Of a DNA stretch of 64,000 nt, positions 14,815-62,055 are shown piece by piece. Made by a program: the position numbers and the translations under genes. The stretch is taken from positions 186,001 through 250,000 of the IMG/VR virus record IMGVR_UViG_3300032046_000001; one strand, written 5' to 3'. Numbering within the stretch: position 1 is the first letter of the stretch; each line of letters starts with the position of its first letter. The notes beneath the pieces were generated by a model, which worked only from the letters and a program-made list of their open reading frames with translations, was not told the DNA's origin and did no database searches.

Positions 14815-14831
14815 TTAATTCCCTCCATATA

Positions 14832-15862: not shown

Positions 15863-15865
15863 TCC

Positions 15866-17659: not shown

Positions 17660-18135
17660 CTTTCAATTATAGTGAATATTTCACTCATCCTTTCTTTATC
17701 AAATCCCAATTTTTCTAATTTAGCCTTGATAAATTCCTTATAAAATCTTGCCGTCATATCATCTGGAATTTCTAAGGATGATTTACCAATAATAAATTCG
17801 CTACCAAAAGAATTAATTTCACAAAATAAATTATATTTTTCTGCAATGATTTTAAAAAATTCGAAGTACCATCTATTAATTTCAACTTCTTCTCCGTTGT
17901 CAACTAAATTCTCAAATGTTTCTCTATTATAAGCTCCGAGAGCTTGTGTACAAAAATCATCTATAGATAATTTTGAAATTTTATGTTTTTCACAATGTTC
18001 TAAATAATAATTATATACCTCATCTAAAAACTTTTTAGGTATATCATCATCATTAGAAAATTCAAATAATTCAATTCCCCATCCTGCAAAAGAAACAGAA
18101 GAACTGTTTGTAACATAATCAGATTTAACTTTCAT
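17656..18135 (-). CDS. VTNSSS-motif family protein #5 (frame stays open upstream to 18324)
   Basis: MKVKSDYVTNSSSVSFAGWG at an internal ATG (18135) with GGAGAGGG SD. Confidence 0.75.
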   Translation of the reverse strand: MKVKSDYVTNSSSVSFAGWGIELFEFSNDDDIPKKFLDEVYNYYLEHCEKHKISKLSIDDFCTQALGAYNRETFENLVDNGEEVEINRWYFEFFKIIAEKYNLFCEINSFGSEFIIGKSSLEIPDDMTARFYKEFIKAKLEKLGFDKERMSEIFTIIER

Positions 18136-18320
18136 TTCCCTCTCCAAACATTCGACGTACTCATGTTGTGCTAATTCATATTCATCTTTAAGTTTTTTCA
18201 CAAATTCATTTTCTTTTACTTTTTTATCTAATAAACTTTCGGATAGATCAATCCATCTTGGTCGGTATCTTTTTCTATAATCATCGAGCAACTTTTTCAT
18301 TTTATCACTCATTCGTGCTT

Positions 18321-18665
18321 TCATTTATCCTCCAAAATTATTTTACGTTTTTCAAACCACTCATCCAATGTCAAAATTTCATAATGAACATGTTTTTTAT
18401 AAGTATTATAATCAAAGTGAAGAAAGTCCCATGTTCGAAACCTATTATCTGAAATAGTAAATTCTGTTGGAACCATTTCTTTAGACCATTCTCTTATACC
18501 CCATGTCCAAGATGGTGGCATTTCAATAATTTTATTGACAAATTCTTCCAGAATTGGATTCAACATCTCTTTTATTTTTTCTTTTGATTCTGATTCAATT
18601 TTATAAATATTATAGGTTATATATCCGTCAATACTATTCGAGCATTCTATAATAAATTTATTCAT
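18321..18665 (-). CDS. Hypothetical protein, 'TLxEWF' paralog family
   Basis: Similar to 19477-19782 and 22515-22868 (YxIxxxS..., YEILTLDEWF). Confidence 0.65.
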   Translation of the reverse strand: MNKFIIECSNSIDGYITYNIYKIESESKEKIKEMLNPILEEFVNKIIEMPPSWTWGIREWSKEMVPTEFTISDNRFRTWDFLHFDYNTYKKHVHYEILTLDEWFEKRKIILEDK

Positions 18666-18910
18666 TTGAGTCTTTTATCCACACTTTTTTTATATTTCAT
18701 CCAAGAACATTCTTTTAGGTGTTTACTATAAAGTCCTTTTATAATATTTTTACCACAACCAGGACATACACGACAACAGGGAATACGGTGTTTTACCGTA
18801 CTCCCTGATATATGACAACGACAAGTACATTCTTCTAATGATTTAACCATCTCTTTCAATTTTTGTTTAGTTTCTTTTTTAATTTCTTTAACTCCTTTTA
18901 TTTTTTTCAA
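18662..18910 (-). CDS. Small basic Cys-rich hypothetical protein
   Basis: CTCRCH...CCRVCPGC...H..EC. Confidence 0.6.
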   Translation of the reverse strand: MKKIKGVKEIKKETKQKLKEMVKSLEECTCRCHISGSTVKHRIPCCRVCPGCGKNIIKGLYSKHLKECSWMKYKKSVDKRLK

Positions 18911-19346
18911 TAAAAACTTTCCTTTTTTTACTGATTATTTCTTTAGTTTTTTCTAAATGATGTTTTCCGAAGAATGGATTATTTTTACCTTTATTGTGAT
19001 CAACATTATGATTATATTTTGTTTTCTTTTCTAAATTTTCATAATAATTATTTAATTTAATATCATCTTTGTGATGAATACATTCATTTAATTTTAATTT
19101 ATCATTATAAAAAGTTTCATATACTAAAATGTGAACTCTTTTAGTTTTTTGTTTTTTATTCTTGCATAAAATAACTTGAAAATAACCCTTACTATCTATT
19201 CCTTGTTTTAGTATTCTTTCTTTTTTATATTTTAATGATTTAACTCTACCCAAGTTGCTAACACGATAGTCATTAAAATCTTGAATAATTTTCCATATTT
19301 CATTTTCTAAATCATCTATATCTAAATTTTTAAAAATTTTAATCAT
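18888..19346 (-). CDS. NUMOD4/HNH homing endonuclease
   Basis: EIWKII...YRVSNLGRVKS (NUMOD4), RVHILV, IHHKDD...NLE (HNH); SD before ATG at 19346. Confidence 0.8.
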   Translation of the reverse strand: MIKIFKNLDIDDLENEIWKIIQDFNDYRVSNLGRVKSLKYKKERILKQGIDSKGYFQVILCKNKKQKTKRVHILVYETFYNDKLKLNECIHHKDDIKLNNYYENLEKKTKYNHNVDHNKGKNNPFFGKHHLEKTKEIISKKRKVFIEKNKRS

Positions 19347-19381
19347 TATAATCTCCAATTATTATTCTCAAGTTTAAATTT

Positions 19382-19440
19382 AAAGAGAGAAGGAAGTTTG
19401 AGATCACTTCTTTTCAAGTCGTGATTCTCTATCTCTCTTT
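19382..19440 (-). promoter_or_regulatory. Candidate structured 5' leader upstream of the HNH gene
   Basis: Outer stem AAAGAGAG/CTCTCTTT; homologous to 58632-58689. Confidence 0.5.
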
Positions 19441-19476
19441 TATTATCATATAATGAAAAATAAATTTATAATAAAA

Positions 19477-19782
19477 TCATTCTTCGTCTTCAAATTTAAA
19501 ATCGTCCGTTTTCTTTTTAAAATCATCAAACCAATCATTTAATTCATAAATTGTAATTTCTGGAGAAAAACAAGGTTTTTGATTCCCATCTTCACCATAA
19601 TAGGCGAAATCATAAAACCTATAATATATACTACCACGAAATTCAAAATAATATGGTGGTTCTTTTAATTCACAAAATTGATTTATTAATGATTCCAATT
19701 CAGTTTTTACTTCTTCAACTGAATTGGCTATAATAGGATAAACACCACCAGGGGTATCAATTATAATTTTCATATCAATCAT
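19477..19782 (-). CDS. Hypothetical protein, 'TLxEWF' paralog family
   Basis: YPIIANSVEEVK...ITIYELNDWF. Confidence 0.6.
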   Translation of the reverse strand: MIDMKIIIDTPGGVYPIIANSVEEVKTELESLINQFCELKEPPYYFEFRGSIYYRFYDFAYYGEDGNQKPCFSPEITIYELNDWFDDFKKKTDDFKFEDEE

Positions 19783-20164
19783 CCCTCCAACTATCTTCTA
19801 CAATTCCACATTCTGATGAATCAAAACCAAGTTGTTCAAAAACTTTATCAAGTCTTTTTTCAAATTGTTTCTTAGTTTCATCATCATTCATATCACTGTA
19901 TTCTATGCCAATATAATTGGTATCATCCCAAGGATTAGAATGTACCTCAAGATCAACACTCATTGTTTTACAAGCTATATCGGCTACCATGTAAAGATCC
20001 ACACCTCTCTTAAATTTTTCATAAGTACAATCTGGAGCAAGTTTATCTTTCATAGCATCATAAGTTTTTTGAATAACCGACTCTGGAATTTTAGACATAG
20101 ATAACCCATACATACAAAAACTTACACTACTGCTGTTTGTCACATAATCAATTTTTACTTTCAT
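19775..20164 (-). CDS. VTNSSS-motif family protein #6
   Basis: MKVKIDYVTNSSSVSFCMYG; MNDDETKKQF...LGF. Confidence 0.8.
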   Translation of the reverse strand: MKVKIDYVTNSSSVSFCMYGLSMSKIPESVIQKTYDAMKDKLAPDCTYEKFKRGVDLYMVADIACKTMSVDLEVHSNPWDDTNYIGIEYSDMNDDETKKQFEKRLDKVFEQLGFDSSECGIVEDSWRDD

Positions 20165-20174
20165 TATTTTCCTT

Positions 20175-20577
20175 TTAGTAATTTACATTCTTCTTTGGGG
20201 TGACATCAGAATAATAACTTTCCTCAATATATTCAACATCACCATAAATTCCCAATAACATTAATAAATTTTCAATTCTTTTTATTAAATCATCTTCTGT
20301 TTCACCAGTTTCTTTATCGTATGATGATAAACCAATAACTACTTCATGTTCATTCTGAAGATATTTTAACTCCAATTTTCTACATTCACCTTTAAGATCA
20401 TTAAGCTGAGCTTGAAGATCTAATTTATACTCTTCAAATGTCCCAGTATACCTGGAAAATTTAAATAAGTTTTTGATAATACTCTCGTTTAATCCGTCAC
20501 GAATAAACACATAGGTGCCCCCAAACACAAAATGAAGTGCTACTACTATTCGTTACAAAACCCAATTTAATTTTCAT
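20175..20577 (-). pseudogene. VTNSSS-motif family protein #7, split by a +1 frameshift in a G5 run
   Basis: ATG 20577 gives MKIKLGFVTNSSSTSFCVWG; removing one G at 20518-20522 continues WGTY... as in paralog #10; span is 403 nt = 3n+1. Confidence 0.75.
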
Positions 20578-21014
20578 TCGTACCACTCCTTATCAATATA
20601 TTCGATTTTATTACAAAATTCTTTAAAATCAACAGCATTGGTTTCTTTAAACATTAATTCAAAGATCTCTTTGATTATATTTATATCACTGGAACAATCT
20701 TCATATATATATTCTCCGGTTCTACAATTATATTGTCCTCTGGCATACAAACCGATAAAAATTTCTTCAGTTTCACAACAATAACGAGCAATTAATTTGT
20801 GATCTTCAATAAAATCATAAAAAATCTCATTTATAGTACTAAGTACGAATTCTTCAAAACATTCAATCTTTCTCATATTATGATATCTATCTGATTTTTT
20901 AAAATAATCATATATTGGATGCCATAGACTTTCGGGAACATATTTAATCTTGATACCATAACCAGTGAATGATGTACTACTACTATTAGTTACGAAATCA
21001 AATTTTATTTTCAT
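20574..21014 (-). CDS. VTNSSS-motif family protein #8
   Basis: MKIKFDFVTNSSSTSFTGYG; ATGA overlap at 21011-21014; close duplicate of #9. Confidence 0.8.
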   Translation of the reverse strand: MKIKFDFVTNSSSTSFTGYGIKIKYVPESLWHPIYDYFKKSDRYHNMRKIECFEEFVLSTINEIFYDFIEDHKLIARYCCETEEIFIGLYARGQYNCRTGEYIYEDCSSDINIIKEIFELMFKETNAVDFKEFCNKIEYIDKEWYE

Positions 21015-21457
21015 TGATACCATTCCTTATCAATAAATTCAATTTTTTCGATCATTTCATTAAAATCAACAATTGCGGTTTCTGAAAATAGTACTTTAAA
21101 AATTTCTTTTACTTTTTCTGGATTTCTGGTTGATTCATCATAAATATATTTTTTTATTTTGACATCATAATGTCCTCGTTCTTTTATACCAATAAAAAAT
21201 ACACTTTCTTCTTGACAGTATTTAATATTTAAATTAAAATCTTCAATAAAATCTTGAAATACTCCACCAATACGACCGTTCAAAACAAATTCTTCAAAAT
21301 TCATATCTTCCATATCATAATTATTTTCTTCATTATGCGCCTTGGCATAGTTGTATAGAAGATGCCATAATCTCTCAGGAATATTTTTTAATTTGATACC
21401 ATATCCCGTGAATGATGTACTACTACTGTTTGTAACATAATCAAATTTAATTTTCAT
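21011..21457 (-). CDS. VTNSSS-motif family protein #9
   Basis: MKIKFDYVTNSSSTSFTGYG. Confidence 0.8.
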   Translation of the reverse strand: MKIKFDYVTNSSSTSFTGYGIKLKNIPERLWHLLYNYAKAHNEENNYDMEDMNFEEFVLNGRIGGVFQDFIEDFNLNIKYCQEESVFFIGIKERGHYDVKIKKYIYDESTRNPEKVKEIFKVLFSETAIVDFNEMIEKIEFIDKEWYQ

Positions 21458-21816
21458 ATAATTTCCCCATATGACTCGAATTTCCTTTCTCTCAACAGAT
21501 CAAAATCAACAAATTCAAGTTTAATAACATCTAAAAAACAATCCCATGCATCTAACTCTGATATAAAATCTTTTTGTACCATTGTATCGTCGTTTCCTGA
21601 AACAACAACAATAAATATTGAACTTCCATCCATGTCGTGACTTCTATTAAAACTGACTTCTACATAATCATGAATAATTTCTCTAACAACTTCATTATTA
21701 CAATATTCAGTAAATATTTTGACTTTAAAGTTTGGACACCATTCATCATGGGTTCTTTTAAGAACAGTAATATGTTGTGGAACTGATCGTTTATAACAAC
21801 CATTTTCATCTTTCAT
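21454..21816 (-). CDS. Hypothetical protein (paralog of 22228-22530)
   Basis: AGGAG SD before ATG 21816; C-terminal SG.DD...DF.SE.DA.DCF..(V/I)I.L.F shared with the paralog. Confidence 0.6.
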   Translation of the reverse strand: MKDENGCYKRSVPQHITVLKRTHDEWCPNFKVKIFTEYCNNEVVREIIHDYVEVSFNRSHDMDGSSIFIVVVSGNDDTMVQKDFISELDAWDCFLDVIKLEFVDFDLLRERKFESYGEII

Positions 21817-21820
21817 ACTT

Positions 21821-22024
21821 TTAATCAAACTCCTTATATAAATCTGATTTCCAATGATTTGGAATTGTTGATTGGGAAATATTAATAATCCCGCCACAAA
21901 CTTTACATATGATGTAGTCACCACTGAATTCTACAACATGGATATCATCTTTATATACACCAAGAACACTCTTACAGAATGGACAACTTTTTCTAATAAA
22001 ATCGTTATTTATTATAACATCCAT
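21821..22024 (-). CDS. Small zinc-ribbon protein
   Basis: CPFC...CKVC. Confidence 0.6.
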   Translation of the reverse strand: MDVIINNDFIRKSCPFCKSVLGVYKDDIHVVEFSGDYIICKVCGGIINISQSTIPNHWKSDLYKEFD

Positions 22025-22033
22025 ATCTATCTC

Positions 22034-22240
22034 CTATACAGATTTATATCGAGGATTCCTTTTTAAATTAATATGTCTTATACCAATTCGTTTCTTATGT
22101 TTTTCTATGTTAGCAGTATATGCAAGTACCATCTTTCTAAAATTTTCGGGATCTGTTAAGTCAACGAGTGGCATTTTCTCATATTTTTCTCTCAAATCAT
22201 CCATTATTTTTTTCTTTTCTTCTTCTGTCATTTTATACAC
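22034..22240 (-). CDS. Hypothetical protein
   Basis: ORF in a tightly packed operon. Confidence 0.55.
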   Translation of the reverse strand: MYKMTEEEKKKIMDDLREKYEKMPLVDLTDPENFRKMVLAYTANIEKHKKRIGIRHINLKRNPRYKSV

Positions 22241-22530
22241 ACCTTCAAAAAATTCATTTTTTCGAGATCTTTAAAATTTATAAATTTTAATTGAATTATA
22301 TTCATAAAACAATCTTTCGCGTCGGATTCTGTATCAAAATCATGCAACATTTTAATACCGTTACAACCGCCACCAGAAATAAATATTCTGAATTTTGGTT
22401 GATATGCAAACTCTCCCGTCAATAATTCTATAAGTTGTATCATAACTAATCCAAAATAACTTGATCGCCAATCATCACTCGTTGATTTAAATACTTCTAT
22501 ATATAATTTTTCACTCAATCTTCTGACCAT
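22228..22530 (-). CDS. Hypothetical protein (paralog of 21454-21816)
   Basis: HDFDTESDAKDCFMNIIQLKF. Confidence 0.6.
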   Translation of the reverse strand: MVRRLSEKLYIEVFKSTSDDWRSSYFGLVMIQLIELLTGEFAYQPKFRIFISGGGCNGIKMLHDFDTESDAKDCFMNIIQLKFINFKDLEKMNFLKVCIK

Positions 22531-22868
22531 CTATCTCTATGCTGAATTACAGCACTGTTTTCATCATCTTCTTCAAATAATTTTATTTCATCTCTAATAT
22601 ACCATTCATTAATAGTTATTATCTTATATTCAAACCATACTTTGCTTTGATACCAATCACAGTATATAAAATTAGATGCGAAAAATTCTATTCCATTAAT
22701 TTGAAATTCCCATTCATGAATAAAATTTGTACTGTCGCCTTTTTCCCAATAACCTTCGTCTATTATCTGTTGAAGTACAGGGTCTAATATATTTCTAATC
22801 TGTTGTTCAGATTTAGCAGTAATCCTATATATGTGGTCATTTGGACAAAGTATAATATATTTATTCAT
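22515..22868 (-). CDS. Hypothetical protein, 'TLxEWF' paralog family
   Basis: IYRITAKSEQQIR...YKIITINEWY. Confidence 0.65.
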   Translation of the reverse strand: MNKYIILCPNDHIYRITAKSEQQIRNILDPVLQQIIDEGYWEKGDSTNFIHEWEFQINGIEFFASNFIYCDWYQSKVWFEYKIITINEWYIRDEIKLFEEDDENSAVIQHRDRWSED

Positions 22869-23251
22869 CTATCCTCCCAAGAAGTTAATATAAATTCTGG
22901 TTCTTTGTTAATACCGATGATTTTTAATTTTTCTTTAATTTCATTTTTGAATTCATCCAGAGTTTGATCACCTCTCATTTTCTCAGGACTTCTTCCAAAT
23001 ATAATATACGATGTGCTAAACATATCACCTTTTTCTATAAAATCAAAATTATTATTACGACAAAATTCTCTAATATCATCATATTGACTATTTTTATTTT
23101 TAAAATATAATTCTATATTACCAATTCCACCCACATATTTATATAATTTTTCTGCGATATCTTTAGTGATATCGCAGAAATCAAGATATGTTCCCCATAC
23201 ACAAAAAGAGACTGAACTACTATTCGTAACAAACGATGTTTTTATTTTCAT
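22865..23251 (-). CDS. VTNSSS-motif family protein #10
   Basis: MKIKTSFVTNSSSVSFCVWGTY; GRSPEKMRGDQTLDEFK. Confidence 0.8.
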   Translation of the reverse strand: MKIKTSFVTNSSSVSFCVWGTYLDFCDITKDIAEKLYKYVGGIGNIELYFKNKNSQYDDIREFCRNNNFDFIEKGDMFSTSYIIFGRSPEKMRGDQTLDEFKNEIKEKLKIIGINKEPEFILTSWEDR

Positions 23252-23413
23252 TCTACACTATCCCACAACTTTTTAATCTGATCCTGTTCTTCTAAAGTAG
23301 ATTTCTTTTTAAATTGAAACCAACCAAATGTTTTTTCAAATAATTCCCATGTTGGTTCAAATCCAGCTTTTCTAATTTCATTTTTTAATTTTTTATTACC
23401 GTTTTGGTTTCAT
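23248..23413 (-). pseudogene. Small gene with an apparent +1 frameshift in its first five codons
   Basis: ATG directly follows the upstream TAA; the +1 frame is open to a TGA overlapping the next ATG; span 166 nt = 3n+1. Confidence 0.5.
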
Positions 23414-23752
23414 TTAATATCCAGGATCGAGATCAACATAATAATCAATCTCTGTATTATCAAATCCAATTTGTTTTAATTTATTTTTTATTTTTTCTTT
23501 AAATTCACGAAGAGTTTGATCTTCTTCCATATCACATGGATGTAAACCTATAAATATATTATCAATTTCATCTTTATGATATATCAACCCAAATGATTTA
23601 CATAATTCTTCAAGTTCATCATAAAATAATACTGAATATTTTTTATAGTCATCAATAGTTTTAAATATTTGATATTCACTATTAAATAATATTTCTAAAG
23701 TTTTACTTGGAAGATCTCTTTTGGATGTTTCAATTCCCCAAATTGTCAACAT
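23414..23752 (-). CDS. VTNSSS-family homolog lacking the N-terminal motif
   Basis: Starts MLTIWG; keeps IGLHP.DMEEDQTLREFK...L..IGF. Confidence 0.7.
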   Translation of the reverse strand: MLTIWGIETSKRDLPSKTLEILFNSEYQIFKTIDDYKKYSVLFYDELEELCKSFGLIYHKDEIDNIFIGLHPCDMEEDQTLREFKEKIKNKLKQIGFDNTEIDYYVDLDPGY

Positions 23753-24162
23753 TGAATTATTCCATTACAAAATTCGATTTGATCTGCCCAAAATACACAA
23801 TCCTTTTTTGGTATAAGTCCTGTTTTATTAATTTCATCAACAATTCGTATCTTAAAATCTTTTAAAGTTTCATTATCTTTCATCTTATCTGGACTCATAC
23901 CAACTATCTTTTCACCATCGTCTGTGTATATAATTTCGAGAACATCTTCCAATTTTTCCATTATATAATTAAAACAATCATAATCTTCCATGAAATATTC
24001 ACGAGTGATTGGTTTTGATCGTGTTGAATTGTAACCTCTATCATATTCTTCCCACGCCTTCTGTTTCATTTCTTCAGTAATATTATCTCTTGTTATAACA
24101 ACACCCCAAAGACAATAAGCGCAACTACTACTATTTGTTACGAAACCCAATTTTACTTTCAT
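23746..24162 (-). CDS. VTNSSS-motif family protein #11
   Basis: MKVKLGFVTNSSSCAYCLWG; VGMSPDKMKDNETLKDFK. Confidence 0.8.
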   Translation of the reverse strand: MKVKLGFVTNSSSCAYCLWGVVITRDNITEEMKQKAWEEYDRGYNSTRSKPITREYFMEDYDCFNYIMEKLEDVLEIIYTDDGEKIVGMSPDKMKDNETLKDFKIRIVDEINKTGLIPKKDCVFWADQIEFCNGIIQC

Positions 24163-24657
24163 GTATTTATTTCCTCACATATTGAATCCAAACGTATAGA
24201 ATCTTTATCAAAACCAGCTTCAATAAACGCTGTCTTAATTGATTCTTTATAATCTTTTAAAGTTTCATCTTCCTTCATACTGAATGGGGATTTTCCAATA
24301 AGTACTAACTCACATTCATGAGAAAAAATAACATCAAGTCCATGATCGCATAAATAACGAATTATATATTCTGTGAAATTATAATCAAATTCTCTTACTT
24401 TTCTACGAAAAAAATCATAAGTTACTTTTTTTGATTCTATTGGATGACCTGTACTATAATAATTATATGTCTCACGATAAAAAACCACCATCTTTATTAT
24501 TATCCAAGTAATATTGATAAGATCTTCTTAGTACTTCTTCTGGTAAATAATCTGGTGTAATTCCATTATCATCACAATCTTTAGCATGAAACTCCATTCC
24601 CCACACACAAAATGAAGTGCTACTACTGTTTGTAACAAAACCTAATTTTATTTTCAT
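24159..24657 (-). pseudogene. VTNSSS-motif family protein #12, split by a +1 frameshift in a T6 run
   Basis: 5' part MKIKLGFVTNSSSTSFCVWG; 3' part carries IGKSPFSMKEDETLKDYK; deleting one T at 24479-24484 joins them; span 499 nt = 3n+1. Confidence 0.75.
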
Positions 24658-24863
24658 ATCTCGAAATAATACTCCTCATTTATTTTAATATCTGGACCAC
24701 TATCGTGGCAACCTTCAAATACGAAATTACCCTTATTTGTCTTAATTACTAATCGATATGAACAATACTGTCCGATATAATCTCCTTCTTGAACATCATC
24801 ATCATCATAAATATTTATTTCTTCGATTATTGCGCCATTGAGATTTTTGGGTATTAATTTCAT
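24654..24863 (-). CDS. Hypothetical protein
   Basis: GGAG SD; ATGA overlap with the downstream gene. Confidence 0.6.
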   Translation of the reverse strand: MKLIPKNLNGAIIEEINIYDDDDVQEGDYIGQYCSYRLVIKTNKGNFVFEGCHDSGPDIKINEEYYFEI

Positions 24864-24887
24864 TTTATTTACTCTCCAAAAAAAATT

Positions 24888-24916
24888 AAGACCTCACCCA
24901 ATTTGAGTGAGGTCTT
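24888..24916 (-). terminator. Intrinsic terminator
   Basis: AAGACCTCAC / GTGAGGTCTT 10-bp stem; T tract follows on the - strand. Confidence 0.7.
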
Positions 24917-24921
24917 TTATA

Positions 24922-25302
24922 CTAACTAATCCAAACTTCATTGATAAGATATGGTTCTTGAGTAAATCCGAGTTCTTTTAACTCATTTTGGATTCTATTT
25001 TTTAATTCTCCAAGTGTCATATCATTTTTCAAATAGTCTGGACCTAATCCCAAACAATAGGTAAAACCTCTTTGTATACAACGTAAATTTAAATTTGAAA
25101 AACTTTCAAATTCACTTTGATAAAATTTATTATCTATATATTCACGATATCCGTTACAGATATTTGTAGAATTTATTCGGTTGTGTCTCTCATACATCTT
25201 AACAAGAACTTCATATGGTAATGATCGAACATCTACATAAATACCCCACATACAAACGCTATTTATAGTTATGGGTTGTTTAAAATGATACGTGTTATCC
25301 AC
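24922..25302 (-). CDS. VTNSSS-family homolog with a degenerate N-terminal motif
   Basis: ITINSVCMWG; LGLGPDYLKNDMTLGELK...LKELGF. Confidence 0.7.
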   Translation of the reverse strand: MDNTYHFKQPITINSVCMWGIYVDVRSLPYEVLVKMYERHNRINSTNICNGYREYIDNKFYQSEFESFSNLNLRCIQRGFTYCLGLGPDYLKNDMTLGELKNRIQNELKELGFTQEPYLINEVWIS

Positions 25303-29792: not shown

Positions 29793-29990
29793 TTATTTAT
29801 TTGTTGAATTGTGAAAGTGTTCCCAATTCAATTTAAAACTGTTTTTACTAATAAGTTTGACTGTTTCTTCATCAAAAAATAGATCTTTTTTACACATATC
29901 ACAAAAGATAGTATCGGGTGGATCATTCAATGGATGTCGAACTTCTATAATATAACCGCAATTCTTACACCGATATTCATAAATTGGCAT
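29793..29990 (-). CDS. FmdB-family zinc-ribbon protein
   Basis: MPIYEYRCKNCG...CDMC...KLIS. Confidence 0.75.
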   Translation of the reverse strand: MPIYEYRCKNCGYIIEVRHPLNDPPDTIFCDMCKKDLFFDEETVKLISKNSFKLNWEHFHNSTNK

Positions 29991-30409: not shown

Positions 30410-30658
30410 TTAATCTATTAAATTTAATTCAATTAACTCACTATATGTCAATTCGAATAAATCAGAAGACCAATAATCATCATTAATTAAATGTCGTAAA
30501 TTAACAAAATAATTCCACAATTTAAGATCTATCATTTCTTGTTTGGTGAGTCTGATTACTTTTTTCTTCGCTTCTTCATCACGAATTTCGTTAATTAAAA
30601 GACAATACTCAAAATAATCATTGTCATTATAAAATCTCATATAAATGCTTGACAACAT
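30410..30658 (-). CDS. Hypothetical protein
   Basis: ORF in operon. Confidence 0.5.
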   Translation of the reverse strand: MLSSIYMRFYNDNDYFEYCLLINEIRDEEAKKKVIRLTKQEMIDLKLWNYFVNLRHLINDDYWSSDLFELTYSELIELNLID

Positions 30659-30963
30659 TGTCCTTTATAACAATATAATAAATCCTTATCATTCAAATCT
30701 TTAAGTAACTTTATAAATGTCTCTAACCCTCCATTTAATAAAAATTCTGTTCGTTCTTCATATTTCATTTCACTAATTTTATCAGTAAAATTAACAAGTA
30801 TTTTATTAGATTCAATTTCTCTATCCATTGCCTCAGTGAATAGTGTATCATAACCACAATAATATGCCCTTGCTACTTTCTCAGTAATCAATTCTCTCAT
30901 TTTATCTTCTGATTCTTGGATTGTATCTCTAATAATATTTTCAACCTGTTCAGATGTTTTCAT
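30637..30963 (-). CDS. Hypothetical protein
   Basis: ORF in operon. Confidence 0.6.
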   Translation of the reverse strand: MKTSEQVENIIRDTIQESEDKMRELITEKVARAYYCGYDTLFTEAMDREIESNKILVNFTDKISEMKYEERTEFLLNGGLETFIKLLKDLNDKDLLYCYKGQCCQAFI

Positions 30964-30967
30964 TTTT

Positions 30968-31198
30968 TCAAATCTTCTCTATTAATTGACCTTCAATTTC
31001 AATTATTGGCCAATTGTGCTCATCCCAATCAGAATACTCATTAACTCTCATGATTATTTTATCATATTTTTTTTCATTTTCTTTTTTAATTTCTTCTAAT
31101 TTATTGATAACTTCTTGAATTGTACAACCATCTATATCATTAATTAAATCTACACTTTGAATATTACACGTTCCAGTGATAATCATTTTACCATCCAT
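30968..31198 (-). CDS. ETDEEY-array member 7 (C-terminally truncated)
   Basis: MDGK start; TIQE..KLEEIKKENEKKY shared with 31188-31550. Confidence 0.7.
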   Translation of the reverse strand: MDGKMIITGTCNIQSVDLINDIDGCTIQEVINKLEEIKKENEKKYDKIIMRVNEYSDWDEHNWPIIEIEGQLIEKI

Positions 31199-31550
31199 AT
31201 TGTTCTTTTAACCTCTTAAAAATCATTCTATCGATAACTTCTTTACCTCTACGTTTCTGGGAATCTTTTATTTTATCAAGTTCATCGTTTAATTTTTTTA
31301 ATTCACTCATTCTTTTTTCAAATTCTTCATCAGTTTCTTCTTTGACACCTTTAACTGAAATAAGTTCATGTGTCATTTCACGTTCTCTTTCATACCAAGA
31401 ATCTATATCTATAAATATTTCAGTATATTTATTTTCATTTTCTTTTTTAATTTTTTCAAAAATATCTATAAATTCTTGAATAGATAAACCGGATAATTTA
31501 TAACCTCTAATCTCTTCTATATAATTTATAGATCTTTGTTTAGACTCCAT
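31188..31550 (-). CDS. ETDEEY-array member 6
   Basis: KGVKEETDEEFEKR...FKRLKEQYGW*. Confidence 0.75.
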   Translation of the reverse strand: MESKQRSINYIEEIRGYKLSGLSIQEFIDIFEKIKKENENKYTEIFIDIDSWYEREREMTHELISVKGVKEETDEEFEKRMSELKKLNDELDKIKDSQKRRGKEVIDRMIFKRLKEQYGW

Positions 31551-31914
31551 ATTTATTTTTCAACCTTTCAAATTCTTGACGTTCCCATTCTTCGAATTCT
31601 TTCACCTGTTTTTGTCGTTCTTCTTCTTGTTTTATTTTTAATTCTTTTATTTTTCTTTCATTAATAAGTCGTTTTTCATACTCATCATCTGTTTCTAATC
31701 TATCACCATTAAAATAAATACCGGCTTCGGGATCACCATGATCATAATCACCATCGTTGGCATAACTATAAAAATCAACTGATATATTAGAATAGTCAGG
31801 ATTTTTTTCTTCTACATCATCAAATATCTTTCTAAGATCGGATATAAATATTGGTTCACCATATTTTAATTCAACTACTAAAAATTCTTTGTTTATAATT
31901 TTCTTACCATCCAT
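31540..31914 (-). CDS. ETDEEY-array member 5
   Basis: GDRLETDDEYEKR...FERLKNKYGV*. Confidence 0.75.
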   Translation of the reverse strand: MDGKKIINKEFLVVELKYGEPIFISDLRKIFDDVEEKNPDYSNISVDFYSYANDGDYDHGDPEAGIYFNGDRLETDDEYEKRLINERKIKELKIKQEEERQKQVKEFEEWERQEFERLKNKYGV

Positions 31915-32239
31915 ATTGTTTTCTCAACTTTTCAAAATTTTTTCGATCTTCATCTTTTTTGTGGGATTTCTCTAATTCTTTCATATTTTCCCAATGTTTT
32001 TCATACGCAATTCGTCGTTCATATTCTTCATCATTTTCTTCTCGTATACCTTGAAAATGAAATTCTATTTCACCATAATATGAATAGATTCTCATAGTTA
32101 TATCTTTATATTCTTTTTTATATAAATTTTTAATTTCATTTAATTTATCAGTTATTTTATCAACAGATAATTCATCAATATCATAATCATATAATATTAT
32201 ATCATCTAAATTTATTTGTATGTCTTTTTTACCAGCCAT
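31904..32239 (-). CDS. ETDEEY-array member 4
   Basis: GIREENDEEYERR...FEKLRKQYGW*. Confidence 0.75.
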   Translation of the reverse strand: MAGKKDIQINLDDIILYDYDIDELSVDKITDKLNEIKNLYKKEYKDITMRIYSYYGEIEFHFQGIREENDEEYERRIAYEKHWENMKELEKSHKKDEDRKNFEKLRKQYGW

Positions 32240-32615
32240 ATTTTTCTTTTAATCTCTCAAATGTTTGTTTATCAAAATCTTTTTGATGATCTTGTCTAAT
32301 TTTTTCTCGTTCAGCTTCTTCTTTATCAAGTTCTATTTTTCTCAACCGTTGTTTTTCTTCATATATTAATCGTTTTTGATATTCTTCATCAGTTTCTAAT
32401 CGTTCACCATAAAAAGTTGCTCTTGCTACAGGATTAAATCCCTGTTCTCGATTACCTCCCCATTCATCAAATTCAACGGTTAAATTTTCAAATTTTCCAA
32501 GATATTCTATCCTAATTCTATTAAACATTGTTTCAACTTCTGTGAGTGTTAATGGTTTACCATAAATTAATGGAATCTCAACGAGTTCACAATTTATATA
32601 TTTTTTACCATCCAT
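32229..32615 (-). CDS. ETDEEY-array member 3
   Basis: GERLETDEEYQKR...FERLKEKYGW*. Confidence 0.75.
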   Translation of the reverse strand: MDGKKYINCELVEIPLIYGKPLTLTEVETMFNRIRIEYLGKFENLTVEFDEWGGNREQGFNPVARATFYGERLETDEEYQKRLIYEEKQRLRKIELDKEEAEREKIRQDHQKDFDKQTFERLKEKYGW

Positions 32616-33036
32616 ACTGTTTTTTCATCCTCTCAAATTCAGCTCGATCCTTTTCAACTTTCTTTGACAATGTTTCACTTTCATCTTTCTTCTTTTTTTC
32701 TTCTTGTTTTCTTTTAAGATCATCTAATTTCTTTTGATAATCTTCTTCCCATTTAATTCTTGAATTATATTCTTCATCCGTTTCATCACGTCTACCTCTA
32801 AAAGTTATTTCACTATGTGGTTCATCTTCGTCATTTTGATCATAATCATAATATGAGCTTACTTGAATAAAAATATCATCATATTTTCCTTTATACATTC
32901 TTAATATACCACACAAATATCCCATATGATCTCTTATGGTTGTGTTGTGAAGATCCTCACTATATATAATCCCCTCTAAATCATCAAATTTTTTTATTCG
33001 ATTTCTATTCACTTCGAATTCTTTTTTCGTATCCAT
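32605..33036 (-). CDS. ETDEEY-array member 2
   Basis: MDTKK start at 33036; GRRDETDEEYNSR...FERMKKQYGW*. Confidence 0.7.
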   Translation of the reverse strand: MDTKKEFEVNRNRIKKFDDLEGIIYSEDLHNTTIRDHMGYLCGILRMYKGKYDDIFIQVSSYYDYDQNDEDEPHSEITFRGRRDETDEEYNSRIKWEEDYQKKLDDLKRKQEEKKKKDESETLSKKVEKDRAEFERMKKQYGW

Positions 33037-33316
33037 ATTCCCTATACTTCCTTTCAAGTCTCAATCTTTCAGCTTTTTCTTCATTATTCTCTAATCTCAT
33101 AAAACCTATTCTCGGATATAAACTACCGTCACTATATTGACCATATCCAAGTTCTATTCTAATTTCATTATCTGGATATCCAGCTTGAATTTCATCTAAT
33201 TTATCTTTTAATTCTTGAATGGTAAAATTGTAAACATCATCACCAACAATTTCATCTTCTAACAAAACACCAACACTCAATAAATCATCTATATCTTCAA
33301 TCAAGACTTTCTCCAT
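33005..33316 (-). CDS. ETDEEY-array member 1
   Basis: FMRLENNEEKAER...YREYGY. Confidence 0.65.
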   Translation of the reverse strand: MEKVLIEDIDDLLSVGVLLEDEIVGDDVYNFTIQELKDKLDEIQAGYPDNEIRIELGYGQYSDGSLYPRIGFMRLENNEEKAERLRLERKYREYGYEKRIRSE

Positions 33317-34085
33317 TCATTGTTAGTTCATTATAATATCTATCAAGATCAGCATACTTCTCTTTTACTTCTAAAAATTTCCCACATGTACGTTTACCTT
33401 CATTACACTTACCACTATGTAGACATTTAGGACCAGCATTCTCAAAGATTGTAGGAGCTGCATCTTTCACAAGATATAACATCTTATCAACAATATCGTG
33501 TATTTCTTTTGAAGCTAAATTACAACACCTCAGACTAAAAATATGAAGTAACTCTCTGGCATTACACGTATGAATTATTTGAGTAGTACATGCTTCTGGT
33601 AAAACATATCTCCTATCATCATTTGGTATATCACCAGTCATCATATTATACAATCTCTGAGCAATTGCCATGAATCTTAGGTATCTTTTATGGTATTTTG
33701 AATTTTTTATTGTTTCTGGAATATAATAATCAAAGTGATCATGATTTACATATCGTTGGGATCTAACTGAAAATGAACAAATTCTATGTCTCGTAACCTG
33801 TGCCAACATTGATCGTGAAACACCTGAATATCCAAAGGTAAAACATGGATGTTCAAATGGTGATAGATGTCCAACTGTAAGTAACATCTTGACAAATTTT
33901 GACGTGTCAACTTCAACTGATTTTACAAATTCTTCGTATGTCATACTTTCTTTGTCATATTCACTCAAACTATAAAACTTTAATATCAAATCTTTTAGAT
34001 CTAAGGGTGAATAACAGTTCTTTGCCGCAGTAGCAACTAATCTGTCAGGATTGGGTGTGTGTGCTATTAAATAAACTTCAGACAT
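33297..34085 (-). CDS. thyX: FAD-dependent thymidylate synthase
   Basis: GHLSPFEH, QVTRHRICSFSVRSQRYV (RHRx7SxR), NAREL..F..LRCC..A..EI. Confidence 0.95.
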   Translation of the reverse strand: MSEVYLIAHTPNPDRLVATAAKNCYSPLDLKDLILKFYSLSEYDKESMTYEEFVKSVEVDTSKFVKMLLTVGHLSPFEHPCFTFGYSGVSRSMLAQVTRHRICSFSVRSQRYVNHDHFDYYIPETIKNSKYHKRYLRFMAIAQRLYNMMTGDIPNDDRRYVLPEACTTQIIHTCNARELLHIFSLRCCNLASKEIHDIVDKMLYLVKDAAPTIFENAGPKCLHSGKCNEGKRTCGKFLEVKEKYADLDRYYNELTMNGESLD

Positions 34086-34662: not shown

Positions 34663-34881
34663 TTAAATCTCCTCTTCATTGTTCTTGTTCTTCTTCTTCT
34701 TAATTTTCTCAAATTTTTCTGATTTAAAAATTAATATTTTTCCTTTAACCATAACTTCTACTTTGTCTTCTTGTAAATCATCATCAAAATAAAAATCTTC
34801 AACCTGTTTATTACTTTGTTTCTTCACTTGGTAAATATCTCTCCCAATTAATATCTTCTGGATGATACTTTCTTTTGACAT
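34663..34881 (-). CDS. Hypothetical protein
   Basis: ORF in operon. Confidence 0.5.
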   Translation of the reverse strand: MSKESIIQKILIGRDIYQVKKQSNKQVEDFYFDDDLQEDKVEVMVKGKILIFKSEKFEKIKKKKNKNNEEEI

Positions 34882-35272
34882 TGTACCGTAAAAATCGTGC
34901 GGTCCATGCCGTTAAATATTTAAGTTCAATCGTATTAGCCTTCTTTTCATTACAGATATGACACATAGTCTGTAAGTTAAATAATCTACGTGGTCCACCC
35001 ATACTTTTTGGAATGATATGGTCCACAGTCATTAATACACCATGACCATCTTTAATGGCAAATAAATTAAGGTGTGGTGTTTCATTGGGATGATGACGCT
35101 GTAATTTAAATATACTACCGATTAAACCACATTCAACACAAACTAATGATCGTTTGAATGCTTTTAATCTTTCGGATATAACAGCAACATCCCAATCAAG
35201 TAAATGGGCTTTTTCACTCACTCCAATCAAAGGAAGTATCTCTTCAAGCGGATATATAGCAATTGTTTCCAT
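34811..35272 (-). CDS. HNH endonuclease-domain protein
   Basis: CVECG...MTVDHIIPKSMGG...NLQTMCHICNEKK; GGAG SD before ATG 35272. Confidence 0.8.
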   Translation of the reverse strand: METIAIYPLEEILPLIGVSEKAHLLDWDVAVISERLKAFKRSLVCVECGLIGSIFKLQRHHPNETPHLNLFAIKDGHGVLMTVDHIIPKSMGGPRRLFNLQTMCHICNEKKANTIELKYLTAWTARFLRYNVKRKYHPEDINWERYLPSEETK

Positions 35273-35733
35273 AGTAATTCTCTCCAATTAATTGTCCAAG
35301 TTTTCTCATGCCTTTACGTCCGAAAAACTGCATTCCCGCACCGCTATAAAATAATTTTTTAGCCAGATCATCATTCAAGTCTGCTAAGTCAATTTTATTA
35401 CCTCTTCTTACATTACAAGGAAAACACATGGTTCGTAAATTATTCATATCGTTCTTCCCACCTTTACTCTTAGGAATGATATGATCCACGGTCATCATAA
35501 CTTCAATGTCGGTAAGAGAAAATAAATTTAAAATTCGTCTTCCCTTTTCATTTTCCTGTAAATAAAATACTGTTCCTATACGACCACACTCGGCACACAC
35601 AAGTGATTTCTTAAAAACCAGTAATTTTTTTACTACCAACTCCTATACCTTTATATTCATTTAGATCGACAACGATATTTTTTTCAATGAGTGGTATAAT
35701 CTGTGATATGCTAAATGTGGCTATAGTTTTCAT
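35244..35733 (-). pseudogene. HNH paralog split by a +1 frameshift in an A7 run
   Basis: 5' part MKTIATFSISQIIPLI aligns with METIAIYPLEEILPLI of the neighbour; A7 at 35625-35631 needs A6; span 490 nt = 3n+1. Confidence 0.75.
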
Positions 35734-43040: not shown

Positions 43041-43865
43041 ATGAATAATTTTTATATTTATGTTTATTTAGATTCCAGAAAGCCTGGAAAACATTGTTAT
43101 GATAATATCTGTTTTTTATATGAACCAATTTATATTGGAAAAGGAAAAAATGATAGATGGAAAGTTATTAATGGAAGAACTCCAATTTTTATTAATAAAT
43201 TTAATAAAATTAAAAAATATGGGTTAAAACCAATTGTTATAAAGTTATATGAAAATTTAAATGAAAATTTATCTCTTGAACTAGAAAAAAAATTAATTAT
43301 TGAAATTGATAAAATAAATCCTGGAATTCTTATTAATATGACCAGTGGTGGTGAAGGAACGAGCGGGTATATACACACAGATGAAACAAAAAAAAGATTA
43401 TCAGAGATAAGGAAAAATAAACAAATATCATTAGGTCAAAATAATCCAATGTTTGATATTCATCGTTTTGGGAATAATGCACCACATTTTGGAAAAAAAC
43501 ATTCAGAAGAATCAAAAATTAAAATAAGTGAAAATAGAAAAGGAAAAAATACTGGAAAAGATAATCATAATTTTGGAAAACATCTTCCTAAAGAAACAAG
43601 AAATAAAATTAGTGAAAAACATAAAGGAAAATATATTTCACAAGAAACAAAAGTAAAACTATGTGAAAAACGTAAAAATAAAAAAGGAAATAATAGTCCA
43701 AACCATAAACTAACAGAACAACAAGTTATCCAAATAAAAATATTATTAAAAGAAGGAAATTTAACTCAACAAGAAATTGCCGATATGTTTGGAGTTAGTT
43801 CTATAACAATTTCAAAAATAAAAACAGGAAAAATTTGGTCGCATATTAAATTGGGAGAAAATTAA
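43041..43865 (+). CDS. GIY-YIG-like homing endonuclease with NUMOD3 repeats and HTH
   Basis: YIYVYLDSRK...YIGKGK; FGKKHSEESK repeats; LTQQEIADMFGV. Confidence 0.8.
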   Translation: MNNFYIYVYLDSRKPGKHCYDNICFLYEPIYIGKGKNDRWKVINGRTPIFINKFNKIKKYGLKPIVIKLYENLNENLSLELEKKLIIEIDKINPGILINMTSGGEGTSGYIHTDETKKRLSEIRKNKQISLGQNNPMFDIHRFGNNAPHFGKKHSEESKIKISENRKGKNTGKDNHNFGKHLPKETRNKISEKHKGKYISQETKVKLCEKRKNKKGNNSPNHKLTEQQVIQIKILLKEGNLTQQEIADMFGVSSITISKIKTGKIWSHIKLGEN

Positions 43866-60600: not shown

Positions 60601-60607
60601 TTAAATC

Positions 60608-61084: not shown

Positions 61085-61108
61085 TCATCATTCGAATTCA
61101 CAATCTTC

Positions 61109-61125: not shown

Positions 61126-61141
61126 ATTCAGTGAAGGAACC

Positions 61142-62048: not shown

Positions 62049-62055
62049 GATAAAT

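What the first reader, a model, noticed from the sequence alone, without database searches (positions are those of the whole stretch)
30968..33316. Seven-gene paralog chain whose conserved C-terminus and next N-terminus are the same 11 nucleotides
Seen: consecutive genes overlap by exactly 11 nt (31188-98, 31540-50, 31904-14, 32229-39, 32605-15). tATG GAT GGT AA reads Y-G-W-stop in one frame and M-D-G-K in the next, with variants YGV*/MESK and YGW*/MAGK. At 33036 the stop has become GAA (YGYE/MDTK). Members share G.RxE(T/N)DEEYxxR and a charged coil ending F(E/K)(R/K)(L/M)xxxYG(W/V). Inference: the junction is both a translational-coupling device and the likely duplication breakpoint; the products may hetero-oligomerise.
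Basis: partly seen in the sequence, partly recalled or inferred. Interest (0 to 1): 0.6.

Follow-up and report, generated by a model that had tools for sequence, protein, structure and literature searches.

The report
Overlapping paralog chain in jumbo phage
A 312-kb phage carries seven tandem copies of a very widespread but unstudied small phage gene, and each copy's start codon lies inside the last codons of the copy before it; this is a tidy lineage-specific curiosity, not a new kind of system.

Summary
On the minus strand, just downstream of thyX, seven co-directional genes (g1-g7, 30968-33316) form a chain. Five junctions overlap by exactly 11 nt, reading Y-G-W/V-stop in one frame and M-x-G/S-K in the next. 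The g1-g2 junction has lost its stop and overlaps by 32 nt.

g2-g6 are clear paralogs. g1 is a divergent short-helix member and g7 has the N-terminal domain only.

The family is large: 5,047 representative clusters. It has no Pfam, NCBIfam or PDB match and falls in PHROGs 25568/25224 of unknown function. It is normally single-copy in phages. Its C-terminal motif, (E/L)YERLKKK(Y/F)G, is family-wide and older than the overlap. A syntenic relative ends in KYGW-stop but starts the next copy 12 nt downstream behind a normal ribosome-binding site.

So the overlap exploits the ATG inside Tyr-Gly (TAT GGN); it does not cause the motif's conservation. The overlap is kept in at least five related contigs despite amino-acid changes in both frames.

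Translational coupling is plausible (no well-placed Shine-Dalgarno, no RNA structure) but untested at -11 nt. The "duplication breakpoint" idea has no support. Hetero-oligomerisation has weak support only. Biochemical function remains unknown.

The parts
33297..34085 (-). thyX (flavin-dependent thymidylate synthase). It is the first gene of the tightly packed run and overlaps the g1 ATG by 20 nt.
   Evidence: Pfam PF02511 Thy1 at E 1.1e-56. The same thyX-then-chain order is found in L008, L011, L018 and L058.
33005..33316 (-). g1: a divergent member with a short helix. It ends ...REYGYEKRIRSE because the junction stop has been lost. An alternative TTG start lies 12 nt downstream of the ATG, behind a GGAG.
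   Evidence: Family profile E 1.3e-4. It forms an orthogroup with L008_4309 and L011_847 (support 99/97). The L058 orthologue has the full ETDEEYEKR...KEYGW motifs.
32605..33036 (-). g2: a full member of 143 aa with the longest charged helix. It ends KQYGW*.
   Evidence: E 3.2e-50. Orthologues are P0005, P0006 and P0009.
32229..32615 (-). g3: a full member of 128 aa. This is the copy that was modelled.
   Evidence: E 8.4e-52. The AF2 model has pLDDT 92, with strand 6-16, helix 24-38, strand 44-52, strand 63-73 and helix 76-126.
31904..32239 (-). g4: a full member of 111 aa, starting MAGKK.
   Evidence: E 1.3e-37. Orthologues are P0014 and P0015.
31540..31914 (-). g5: a full member of 124 aa, ending KYGV*. 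It is the closest paralog of g3 (40% identity).
   Evidence: g3-g5, 76 bits; E 1.1e-43. The tree gives 92/85 support.
31188..31550 (-). g6: a full member of 120 aa, starting MESKQ and ending EQYGW*.
   Evidence: E 4.1e-38. Orthologues are P0010-P0013.
30968..31198 (-). g7: a 76-aa copy with the N-terminal domain only. It stops where the R.ETDEEY motif would begin.
   Evidence: Family profile positions 1-69, E 9.6e-10. It is conserved as 69-75 aa proteins in L008, L011 and L059. It groups with g6 in the tree.
32605..32615 (-). Junction g2/g3: ATGGATGGTAA (YGW* / MDGK).
32229..32239 (-). Junction g3/g4: ATGGCTGGTAA (YGW* / MAGK).
31904..31914 (-). Junction g4/g5: ATGGATGGTAA (YGW* / MDGK).
31540..31550 (-). 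Junction g5/g6: ATGGAGTCTAA (YGV* / MESK).
31188..31198 (-). Junction g6/g7: ATGGATGGTAA (YGW* / MDGK).
33005..33036 (-). Junction g1/g2: a 32-nt overlap. The ancestral stop position now reads GAA.
   Evidence: This junction is the most variable in relatives: 20 nt in L011, 8 nt in the ERR12035932 contig and non-overlapping in L058.

Best explanation
**What it is.** The window lies in a 312,420-bp jumbo myovirus with terminal repeats and a distant T4-like terminase. The chain is an old, lineage-specific tandem expansion of a very widespread, uncharacterised family of small phage proteins. It has seven copies here and eight paralog classes across relatives.

**The protein.** Each full member has four parts:
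- a small beta-alpha-beta-beta domain of about 70 aa;
- a nearly invariant acidic motif, R.ETDEEY..R, at the start of one long helix;
- a variable-length, highly charged stretch of helix;
- a C-terminal amphipathic motif, (E/F)ERLK..YG.

**The overlap.** In this lineage the motif ends Tyr-Gly-Trp-stop. Because TAT GGN contains ATG, the next copy starts at that ATG. The previous copy stops 8 nt further on, which gives an 11-nt dual-coded junction. This arrangement arose once and was copied with the unit as the array grew.

**How it most likely works (inferred).**
- thyX and g1-g7 are one transcript.
- A ribosome finishing copy n at UAA or UGA re-engages the AUG 8 nt upstream. Alternatively, or in addition, ribosomes load directly on the unstructured A-rich mRNA.
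- Either way the paralogs would be made together in similar amounts.
- They then act as related adaptor-like proteins that may associate through their helices.

**Shown.** The genes, the paralogy, the dual coding, the age and spread of the family, retention of the overlap in relatives, and the absence of a well-placed SD or RNA structure.

**Inferred.** Co-transcription, reinitiation, oligomerisation, and any cellular role.
For: **Anatomy and paralogy.**

**Size of the family.**
- A profile search of 1.84 billion representatives gave 5,047 hits at E<=1e-3 and 269 at E<=1e-10. Hits are typically 105-125 aa with the same motifs.
- In 38 diverse IMG/VR loci, 37 have a profile hit. Of these, 34 carry one copy, 2 carry a second non-adjacent copy, and only L051 has an adjacent pair, joined by a different 14-nt overlap.

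**The motif is older than the overlap.**
- In L018 the 125-aa copy ends KYGW* (TATGGTTGGTAA), but the next copy starts 12 nt downstream after AAGGAG.
- In L011 and L058 there are KEYGW* ends with Tyr = TAC and no gene starting there.

**The overlap is retained under change.** Junctions in L008, L011, L058, L059 and the ERR12035932 contig are mostly 11 nt although the residues vary: HGW* (CATGG keeps the ATG), YEW*(TGA)/MSGE, YGK*/MENK, YGI*/MESK, and YE*/MNDK at 8 nt.

**Covariation across frames.**
- Residue 2 of the downstream protein (D/A/V) varies exactly with the silent third base of the upstream Gly codon.
- Residue 4 of the downstream protein is K with a TAA stop and E with a TGA stop.

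**The duplications are old.** Each of g1-g7 forms its own orthogroup with copies from relatives, with support 94-100 and stem lengths 0.55-1.07.

**Translation context.**
- The genome uses SD cores at spacers that peak at 6-8 nt; 237 of 422 genes have a core against 10% of random sites.
- No chain junction has a core at 4-11 nt. Two have GAGG at 13 nt.
- Junction RNAs fold no better than shuffles, with z from -0.6 to +0.7.
- There are no promoter or terminator signals above shuffled expectation.

**Literature.** Termination-reinitiation couples overlapping pairs, and such pairs are enriched for subunits of heteromeric complexes (PMC10666635; PMC6728339).

**Structure.** AF2 models have pLDDT 92 and 91. 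The g3+g4 complex scored 0.60 against a best control of 0.01, rated weak support; the runs agreed in at least 83% of contacts and partner pLDDT was at least 83.
Against:
- PMC10666635 treats -8 to +10 nt as the range predictive of reinitiation. It reports lower efficiency at -8 and says longer overlaps are rare, so -11 lies outside what has been tested.
- This AT-rich genome has many other -8, -11 and -14 overlaps (10, 14 and 14 by crude calling). Such overlaps may simply be what compaction yields here.
- Biochemical function is unknown. There is no Pfam, NCBIfam or PDB sequence match.
- There is no fold match above background: best Z 4.8 and Foldseek E 0.1.
- No conserved neighbours were found across diverse loci.
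- The complex prediction is weak and cannot tell homo- from hetero-association.
Confidence: 0.6

Rival explanations
1. The overlap is a neutral by-product with no coupling role. The C-terminal Tyr-Gly happens to contain ATG. Deletion bias in a compact AT-rich genome moved the start there. Each copy is initiated independently on A-rich, unstructured mRNA.
For: - There are 14 other 11-nt overlaps, plus many -8 and -14 overlaps, with unrelated sequences in the same genome.
- The junction RNA is unstructured, which favours de novo initiation.
- Reinitiation efficiency already falls at -8 nt (PMC10666635).
- The g1/g2 junction drifts freely among relatives: 32, 20 and 8 nt, or non-overlapping.
Against: - Across about 27 junctions in six related contigs, about 22 keep exactly 11 nt and the ATG. 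This holds despite substitutions in both frames, including Tyr->His (CAT), which preserves the ATG.
- None of the five junctions has an SD at the usual spacing, although about half of the genome's genes do.
Confidence: 0.25
2. One reading: the 11-mer is the recombination or duplication breakpoint (microhomology between gene start and gene end), and the products form an obligate hetero-oligomer.
For: - The 11-mer flanks every unit, so unequal exchange between junctions would add or remove whole genes.
- Copy number does differ among relatives: an eighth class is present in L011, L058 and the ERR12035932 contig, and g4 is replaced by a homing endonuclease in L008.
- The g3+g4 complex prediction has weak support.
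Against: - Paralogs are only 25-40% identical and each has its own orthogroup. The breakpoints of the original duplications cannot be recovered.
- Any unit-length duplication reproduces the junction, whatever its breakpoints.
- The array ends in a copy truncated at the domain boundary (g7).
- L011 carries a partial copy fused in frame to the next one. Rearrangements therefore do occur inside units.
- Most phages carry a single copy, so the family cannot require a hetero-partner.
Confidence: 0.1
3. The junction is a programmed +1 frameshift site that yields fused, multi-domain read-through proteins.
For: - The downstream frame is +1 relative to the upstream frame, and the shift would occur at a stop codon.
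- A natural in-frame fusion of a partial copy with a g3-like copy exists in L011 (195 aa). Fused products are therefore tolerated.
Against: - By inspection there is no slippery or re-pairing context. tRNA-Trp on UGG cannot re-pair on GGU.
- The codon before the stop varies (TGG, GTC, ATC, AAA).
- There is no stimulatory SD or RNA structure.
- Every copy keeps its own ATG.
Confidence: 0.03

Closest known systems
Translationally coupled overlapping gene pairs (termination-reinitiation; ATGA / TAATG / -8 nt overlaps; Huber et al. 2019, PMC6728339, and 2023, PMC10666635)
   Same: - The genes are co-directional and packed into an operon-like run.
- Each start codon lies inside the end of the upstream ORF.
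- There is no SD at the usual spacing.
- The class is enriched for proteins that assemble together.
   Different: - The overlap is 11 nt. It has the same phase as the -8 class, but is longer than the -8 to +10 range that was tested or treated as predictive.
- The same dual-coded junction is repeated along a chain of paralogs and not between two different genes.
- Coupling has not been measured here.
PHROG families phrog_25568 and phrog_25224 (unknown function)
   Same: - Of 91 family representatives, 53 hit phrog_25568 and 32 hit phrog_25224.
- g5, g2 and g3 hit phrog_25224 at E 4e-7 to 2e-4, and g4 hits phrog_25568 at 2.7e-4.
   Different: - The PHROGs carry no annotation.
- The window's copies match only weakly.
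- Nothing in the PHROG entries concerns tandem arrays or overlaps.
Uncharacterised proteins of other large phages (Klebsiella phage RaK2 H6X4W6, Sinorhizobium phage phiM12 S5MV24, Escherichia phage PBECO4 L7TL52, Acinetobacter phage ME3 A0A172Q0M2)
   Same: They have the same predicted architecture of a small alpha/beta domain plus a long helix. Foldseek against BFVD gave E 4.6e-4 to 3.5e-2 and TM 0.35-0.55.
   Different: All are unannotated. Copy number and junctions in those genomes were not examined.
Tandem paralog expansions in large phage and virus genomes (gene 'accordions')
   Same: - This is a local array of diverged copies of one small gene, with copy number varying between relatives.
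- The same genome has a second, 14-member tandem family at 14473-25302.
   Different: - The copies here are old (25-40% identity) and individually conserved. This is not a recent amplification.
- No selective agent is known. The comparison rests on general knowledge, not on a test made here.
Dodecin-like beta-alpha-beta-beta small domains
   Same: The order of secondary-structure elements in the N-terminal domain is the same.
   Different: The scores are at background: Foldseek E about 0.1 and TM 0.33-0.37, and best VIA Z 4.8. This is not evidence of kinship or of shared function.

Membership tests
The ETDEEY / ERLKKKYG small phage protein family (defined here; overlaps PHROGs 25568/25224) | A significant match to the family profile over the full length | tested here: met
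   - g2-g6 match the paralog profile at E 1e-37 to 8e-52. That profile was built from g2-g6 themselves, so these scores are partly circular.
- Independent support comes from pairwise BLASTP (29-76 bits), from weak PHROG matches and from distant homologues found with the profile.
- g7 matches the N-terminal domain only (E 9.6e-10).
- g1 matches weakly (E 1.3e-4).
The ETDEEY / ERLKKKYG small phage protein family | The R.E(T/N)DEE(Y/F)..R motif at the strand-to-helix boundary, and the C-terminal (F/Y)(E/K)(R/K)(L/M)K..(Y/F)G motif | tested here: met
   - Both motifs are present in g2-g6.
- They are degenerate in g1 (RLENNEEKAERL ... REYGY).
- They are absent from g7, which ends before them.
Translational coupling by termination-reinitiation | Same strand, with the start codon within a few nt of the upstream stop (-8 to +10 nt in PMC10666635) | tested here: inconclusive
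   The genes are on the same strand. The overlap is 11 nt, just outside the range treated as predictive.
Translational coupling by termination-reinitiation | Downstream translation depends on upstream translation | not testable with these tools
   This needs reporter constructs or ribosome profiling. Only indirect support is available: no SD at 4-11 nt and no structure.
Heteromeric complex of the paralogs | Physical association of different copies | tested here: inconclusive
   Complex prediction on g3+g4 scored 0.60 against a best control of 0.01, and the verdict was 'weak support'. By the tool's calibration, 58 of 80 solved complexes and 2 of 110 mismatched pairs reach the mark. At 0.60 or below, only 7 of those 80 do, along with both mismatches.
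Programmed +1 frameshift site | A slippery or re-pairing P-site codon plus a stimulatory element at a stop | tested here: not met
   The codon before the stop varies (TGG, GTC; ATC and AAA in relatives). There is no well-placed SD and no structure. Inspection only.
Dodecin-like fold | Structural similarity above background | tested here: not met
   Foldseek E 0.095 and TM 0.33-0.37. No chain reached Z >= 5 among 48,161 representatives.

The most novel reading that the evidence does not exclude
The family is a near-universal phage 'adaptor'.
- It comprises thousands of clusters, has two almost invariant short motifs and has no annotation.
- Its C-terminal EYERLKKK(F/Y)G helix end would dock on one conserved partner in the host or the phage. 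That partner may be linked to nucleotide metabolism, given the neighbours seen: thyX, thyA, ribonucleotide reductase and dUTPase.
- Its variable N-domain would recruit different clients.
- This jumbo phage would then use a translationally chained array to make a stoichiometric set of eight such adaptors that co-assemble.
Probability: 0.12. Interest if true: 0.65.

Novelty: new variant of a known kind. Interest (0 to 1): 0.38.

Why it matters
- **An unstudied family.** The work flags a very large phage protein family that no one has characterised. It has two sharply conserved motifs, a confident predicted architecture and no Pfam model, which makes it a reasonable target for structural and interaction studies.
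- **A natural test of dual coding.** The chain supplies a series of dual-coded junctions whose substitutions can be read in both frames. It also offers a clean silent mutation, TAT->TAC, that removes the downstream start without changing the upstream protein.
- **Reinitiation beyond -8 nt.** The chain could be used to measure whether reinitiation still works at an 11-nt overlap, which lies outside the published range.
- **Limits.** It does not reveal a new mechanism, and no function is established.

Tried and rejected
**Similarity searches of the region**
- DNA similarity to 50,697 phage records: no match.
- tblastn of g3 and of a typical family member (P0069) against phage records: no match.

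**Protein family and fold searches**
- Pfam, NCBIfam and PDB sequence searches gave only chance-level coiled-coil hits.
- Fold searches of the full model and of the N-domain alone against PDB (Foldseek and VIA wide), BFVD and the ESM Atlas found only unannotated phage proteins or background matches.
- ESM Atlas feature searches scored 0.89 and 0.80, with no named family.

**Locus searches**
- The search for related loci failed with the broad alignment A4, which had no sufficiently conserved stretch.
- With A3 it found 588 pattern hits, none confirmed by tblastn. It worked with A5.

**Genomic context**
- Neighbour clustering in 38 loci found no recurrent neighbour.
- Pfam on 20 neighbours gave one thyA, a GIY-YIG endonuclease, an RNA ligase and a DUF; the rest were unknown.
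- thyX lies within 4 kb in only 2 further loci. I rate the nucleotide-metabolism link as weak and possibly just synteny.

**Signals at the junctions**
- No RNA structure at the junctions.
- No promoter or terminator signal above shuffled expectation.

**Complex prediction**
- g3+g4 received weak support only. It is reported here as inconclusive.

**Not run**
No expression or population data were obtained.

**Other checks**
- No alternative genetic code was needed or used.

**Considered and dropped**
- The idea that the repeated junction is a DNA- or RNA-level element. Third-codon positions in the conserved FERLK..YGW codons vary freely among copies, so conservation does not exceed the protein-level constraint plus the ATG.
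Full report
**1. What is there**

The window is bases 186001-250000 of a 312,420-bp virus record with direct terminal repeats. The genome is 28.6% G+C. It encodes a tail sheath, a baseplate wedge protein and a large terminase. The terminase is only about 28% identical to those of Flavobacterium and cyanobacterial T4-like myoviruses. This is therefore an uncultivated jumbo myovirus distantly related to T4.

The finding lies in a long minus-strand block of small genes. Directly downstream of thyX (33297-34085, Pfam Thy1, E 1e-56) are seven co-directional ORFs, g1-g7 (30968-33316).

Their sequences are:
- ATGGATGGTAA, three times;
- ATGGCTGGTAA, once;
- ATGGAGTCTAA, once.

They read Y-G-W/V-stop in the upstream frame and M-D/A/E-G/S-K in the downstream frame.

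At g1/g2 the equivalent position reads YGYE, and g1 runs on for a 32-nt overlap. thyX itself overlaps the g1 ATG by 20 nt. The next gene starts 4 nt after the g7 stop.

**2. Are they paralogs?**

- g2-g6 match one another at 29-76 bits in BLASTP.
- They share G.R.E(T/N)DEE(Y/F)..R and F(E/K)(R/K)(L/M)K..YG(W/V).
- A profile of g2-g6 finds exactly seven places in the genome, all in this chain. They are the five founders, g7 (E 9.6e-10, N-terminal 69 positions only) and g1 (E 1.3e-4).
- g1's orthologue in a relative (L058) carries clean ETDEEYEKR and KEYGW-stop motifs with a very short helix. g1 is therefore a genuine but degenerate member.
- g7 is a domain-only copy. It is conserved as such in three relatives.

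**3. The family is huge, unannotated and normally single-copy**

A profile that included distant hits (A3) was searched against 1.84 billion representative proteins. It found 5,047 proteins at E<=1e-3 and 269 at E<=1e-10.

The listed hits are 100-130 aa. They start M..KK, carry G.R.ETDEEY.KR, and end (E/L)YERLKKK(Y/F)(G/E) within 0-6 residues of the C-terminus.

Nothing annotates the family:
- No Pfam, NCBIfam or PDB sequence match exists.
- The only library hits are PHROGs 25568 and 25224, both of unknown function.

I examined 38 diverse IMG/VR loci with G+C from 0.29 to 0.61. Of these, 37 have a profile hit:
- 34 carry one copy within +/-4 kb;
- two carry a second copy that is not adjacent;
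- one (L051) has an adjacent pair, joined by a different 14-nt overlap.

**4. Predicted structure**

AF2 models of g3 (pLDDT 92) and of its N-terminal 84 residues (pLDDT 91) agree:
- strand 6-16, helix 24-38, strand 44-52 and strand 63-73;
- then a single helix from residue 76 to the C-terminus.

The invariant acidic motif sits at the start of that helix. The helix has a proximal and a distal hydrophobic cluster, separated by a charged stretch of variable length. About 60-67% of the helix is E/K/R/D/Q.

Fold searches give nothing above background. Foldseek against PDB gave E >= 0.1, and the best VIA Z was 4.8. The only better matches are unannotated proteins of other large phages such as RaK2, phiM12, PBECO4 and ME3, and unnamed viral clusters.

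**5. The overlap in relatives**

Close and middling relatives keep the chain behind thyX. They are L008-L014, L058, L059 and the ERR12035932 contig. They carry up to eight paralog classes; the window lacks the class that sits between g2 and g3.

In a maximum-likelihood tree, each of g1-g7 groups with its counterparts from relatives, with support 94-100 on long stems. The duplications therefore predate these phages and are old.

About 22 of about 27 junctions are exactly 11 nt, although the residues change. Variants include:
- HGW-stop, where CATGG keeps the ATG;
- YEW-TGA / MSGE;
- YGK-stop / MENK;
- YGI-stop / MESK;
- YE-TGA / MNDK, at 8 nt.

The two frames co-vary as dual coding predicts:
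- Downstream residue 2 (D/A/V) tracks the silent third base of the upstream Gly codon.
- Downstream residue 4 is K with TAA and E with TGA.

The chain is also dynamic:
- In L008, a NUMOD4/HNH homing endonuclease sits where g4 should be. The upstream end has become KYNWS-stop, so the ATG is gone. The endonuclease ORF itself runs 11 nt into the next copy.
- In L011, a partial copy is fused in frame to the g3-like copy through the junction (...FERIKNN-MDGKK...).

**6. Which came first, the motif or the overlap?**

The C-terminal motif is a protein feature of thousands of homologues that have no overlap (section 3).

L018 is a more distant phage with the same thyX synteny. Its first copy ends KYGW-stop with TATGGTTGGTAA, yet the next copy starts 12 nt downstream behind AAGGAG.

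In L011 and L058 there are KEYGW-stop ends in which Tyr is TAC and no gene starts there.

So YGW-stop predates the overlap. The overlap uses an ATG that Tyr-Gly provides for free. The conservation of the C-terminus is not explained by its second reading.

Once one overlapping junction exists, any duplication of one unit length copies it. The terminal copy g7 is cut at the domain boundary, not at a junction.

**7. Translation**

- The genome uses Shine-Dalgarno cores. Of 422 ORFs, 237 have one within 25 nt, against 10% of random sites. Spacers peak at 6-8 nt.
- None of the five junctions has a core at 4-11 nt. Two have GAGG at 13 nt, supplied by the E-R codons of FERL.
- The junction RNAs fold no better than shuffled controls.
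- The promoter-like count in the region is at shuffled expectation, and there is no terminator inside the chain.
- In g3-g7 the junction ATG is the first start after the preceding in-frame stop. It is needed to encode the conserved first strand.

These facts fit co-transcription with thyX and initiation by ribosomes that have just terminated 8 nt downstream.

Two points argue for caution:
- The experimental literature treats -8 to +10 nt as the coupling range, and efficiency is already lower at -8 (PMC10666635).
- This genome has 14 other 11-nt overlaps, and many of 8 and 14 nt, with unrelated sequences.

I rate coupling as likely, but not shown.

**8. Association of the products**

Complex prediction on g3+g4 gave a median score of 0.60 against a best control of 0.01. 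The runs agreed in at least 83% of contacts, and partner pLDDT was at least 83. The tool calls this 'weak support'. Scores at or below 0.60 were reached by only 7 of 80 solved complexes, and by both mismatched pairs that passed.

The test cannot separate homo- from hetero-association. Because most phages have one copy, a hetero-partner cannot be obligatory for the family.

**9. Function**

Function is unknown. The context is the early, nucleotide-metabolism part of phage genomes:
- thyX here and in relatives;
- thyA next to the pair in L051;
- ribonucleotide reductase, dCMP deaminase and dUTPase around the single copy in L015.

Most neighbours are unannotated, and no neighbour recurs.

My working model is inference only. 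These would be small adaptor-like proteins whose conserved helix ends bind a common partner while the N-domains have diversified.

**10. Verdict**

The chain is a real and neatly organised feature. It is a lineage-specific, ancient tandem expansion of a widespread unannotated phage family. Its junction is a dual-coded overlap inherited by descent, and it probably serves translational coupling.

It is a variant of known things, namely overlapping coupled genes and tandem paralog arrays, and not a new kind of system. The larger open question it exposes is what this very common family does.

Noticed in passing
window 14473-25302 (minus strand): A second and larger tandem paralog family lies just downstream of the region. 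It has 14 members of about 110-220 aa, linked by BLASTP at E<=1e-5, and four tested members have no Pfam match. Several junctions are 4-nt ATGA-type overlaps.
   Followed up: partly
genome-wide; in the window e.g. 1446-2252, 43041-43865, 46397-47383, 55643-56446, 57726-58595, 59914-60495, 15866-16616, 18888-19358: A 37-member family of homing-endonuclease-like genes (GIY-YIG/NUMOD3 and NUMOD4/HNH_3) is scattered over the 312-kb genome. This is an unusually heavy endonuclease load. Further HNH genes lie at 34811-35639 and 4400-6430.
   Followed up: partly
L008:4985-5587: In a relative, a NUMOD4/HNH homing endonuclease occupies the g4 position inside the chain. The upstream junction has lost its ATG (KYNWS-stop). 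The endonuclease ORF ends 11 nt inside the next copy.
   Followed up: yes
L011:1622-2209: A 195-aa ORF is an in-frame fusion of a partial copy of the eighth paralog class with a g3-like copy, joined through the junction. The upstream g2-like gene ends EYGW-stop with a TAC Tyr codon and is followed by a 75-nt gap.
   Followed up: yes
window 2359-4317 and 6499-13647 (plus strand): The tail-sheath gene (652 aa) and a 2,382-aa ORF downstream match each other in BLASTP. A 676-aa homing or HNH endonuclease gene (4400-6430) lies between them.
   Followed up: no
window 60518-63282 (minus strand): A cluster of seven tRNA genes: Ser-tga, His-gtg, Lys-ttt, Asp-gtc, Leu-caa, Trp-cca and Ile-tat.
   Followed up: no
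whole genome G000: By crude ORF calling, same-strand overlaps of 8, 11 and 14 nt are common (10, 19 and 14 pairs, including the chain). Only 4-nt (56) and 1-nt (21) overlaps are more frequent. Start calls were not curated.
   Followed up: partly
L051:2599-4165: In an unrelated 241-kb phage contig, an adjacent pair of family members follows a thyA-type thymidylate synthase (Pfam PF00303, E 1.5e-119). This mirrors the thyX-then-chain order here, with a non-homologous enzyme.
   Followed up: partly
window 29793-29990 and 30637-30963: Downstream of the chain lie a conserved 108-aa gene that ends in a Cys-rich tail (...GQCCQ...) and a Zn_ribbon_8 protein. Both are syntenic in L008 and L011, and L018 also has a Zn_ribbon_8 gene downstream.
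   Followed up: no
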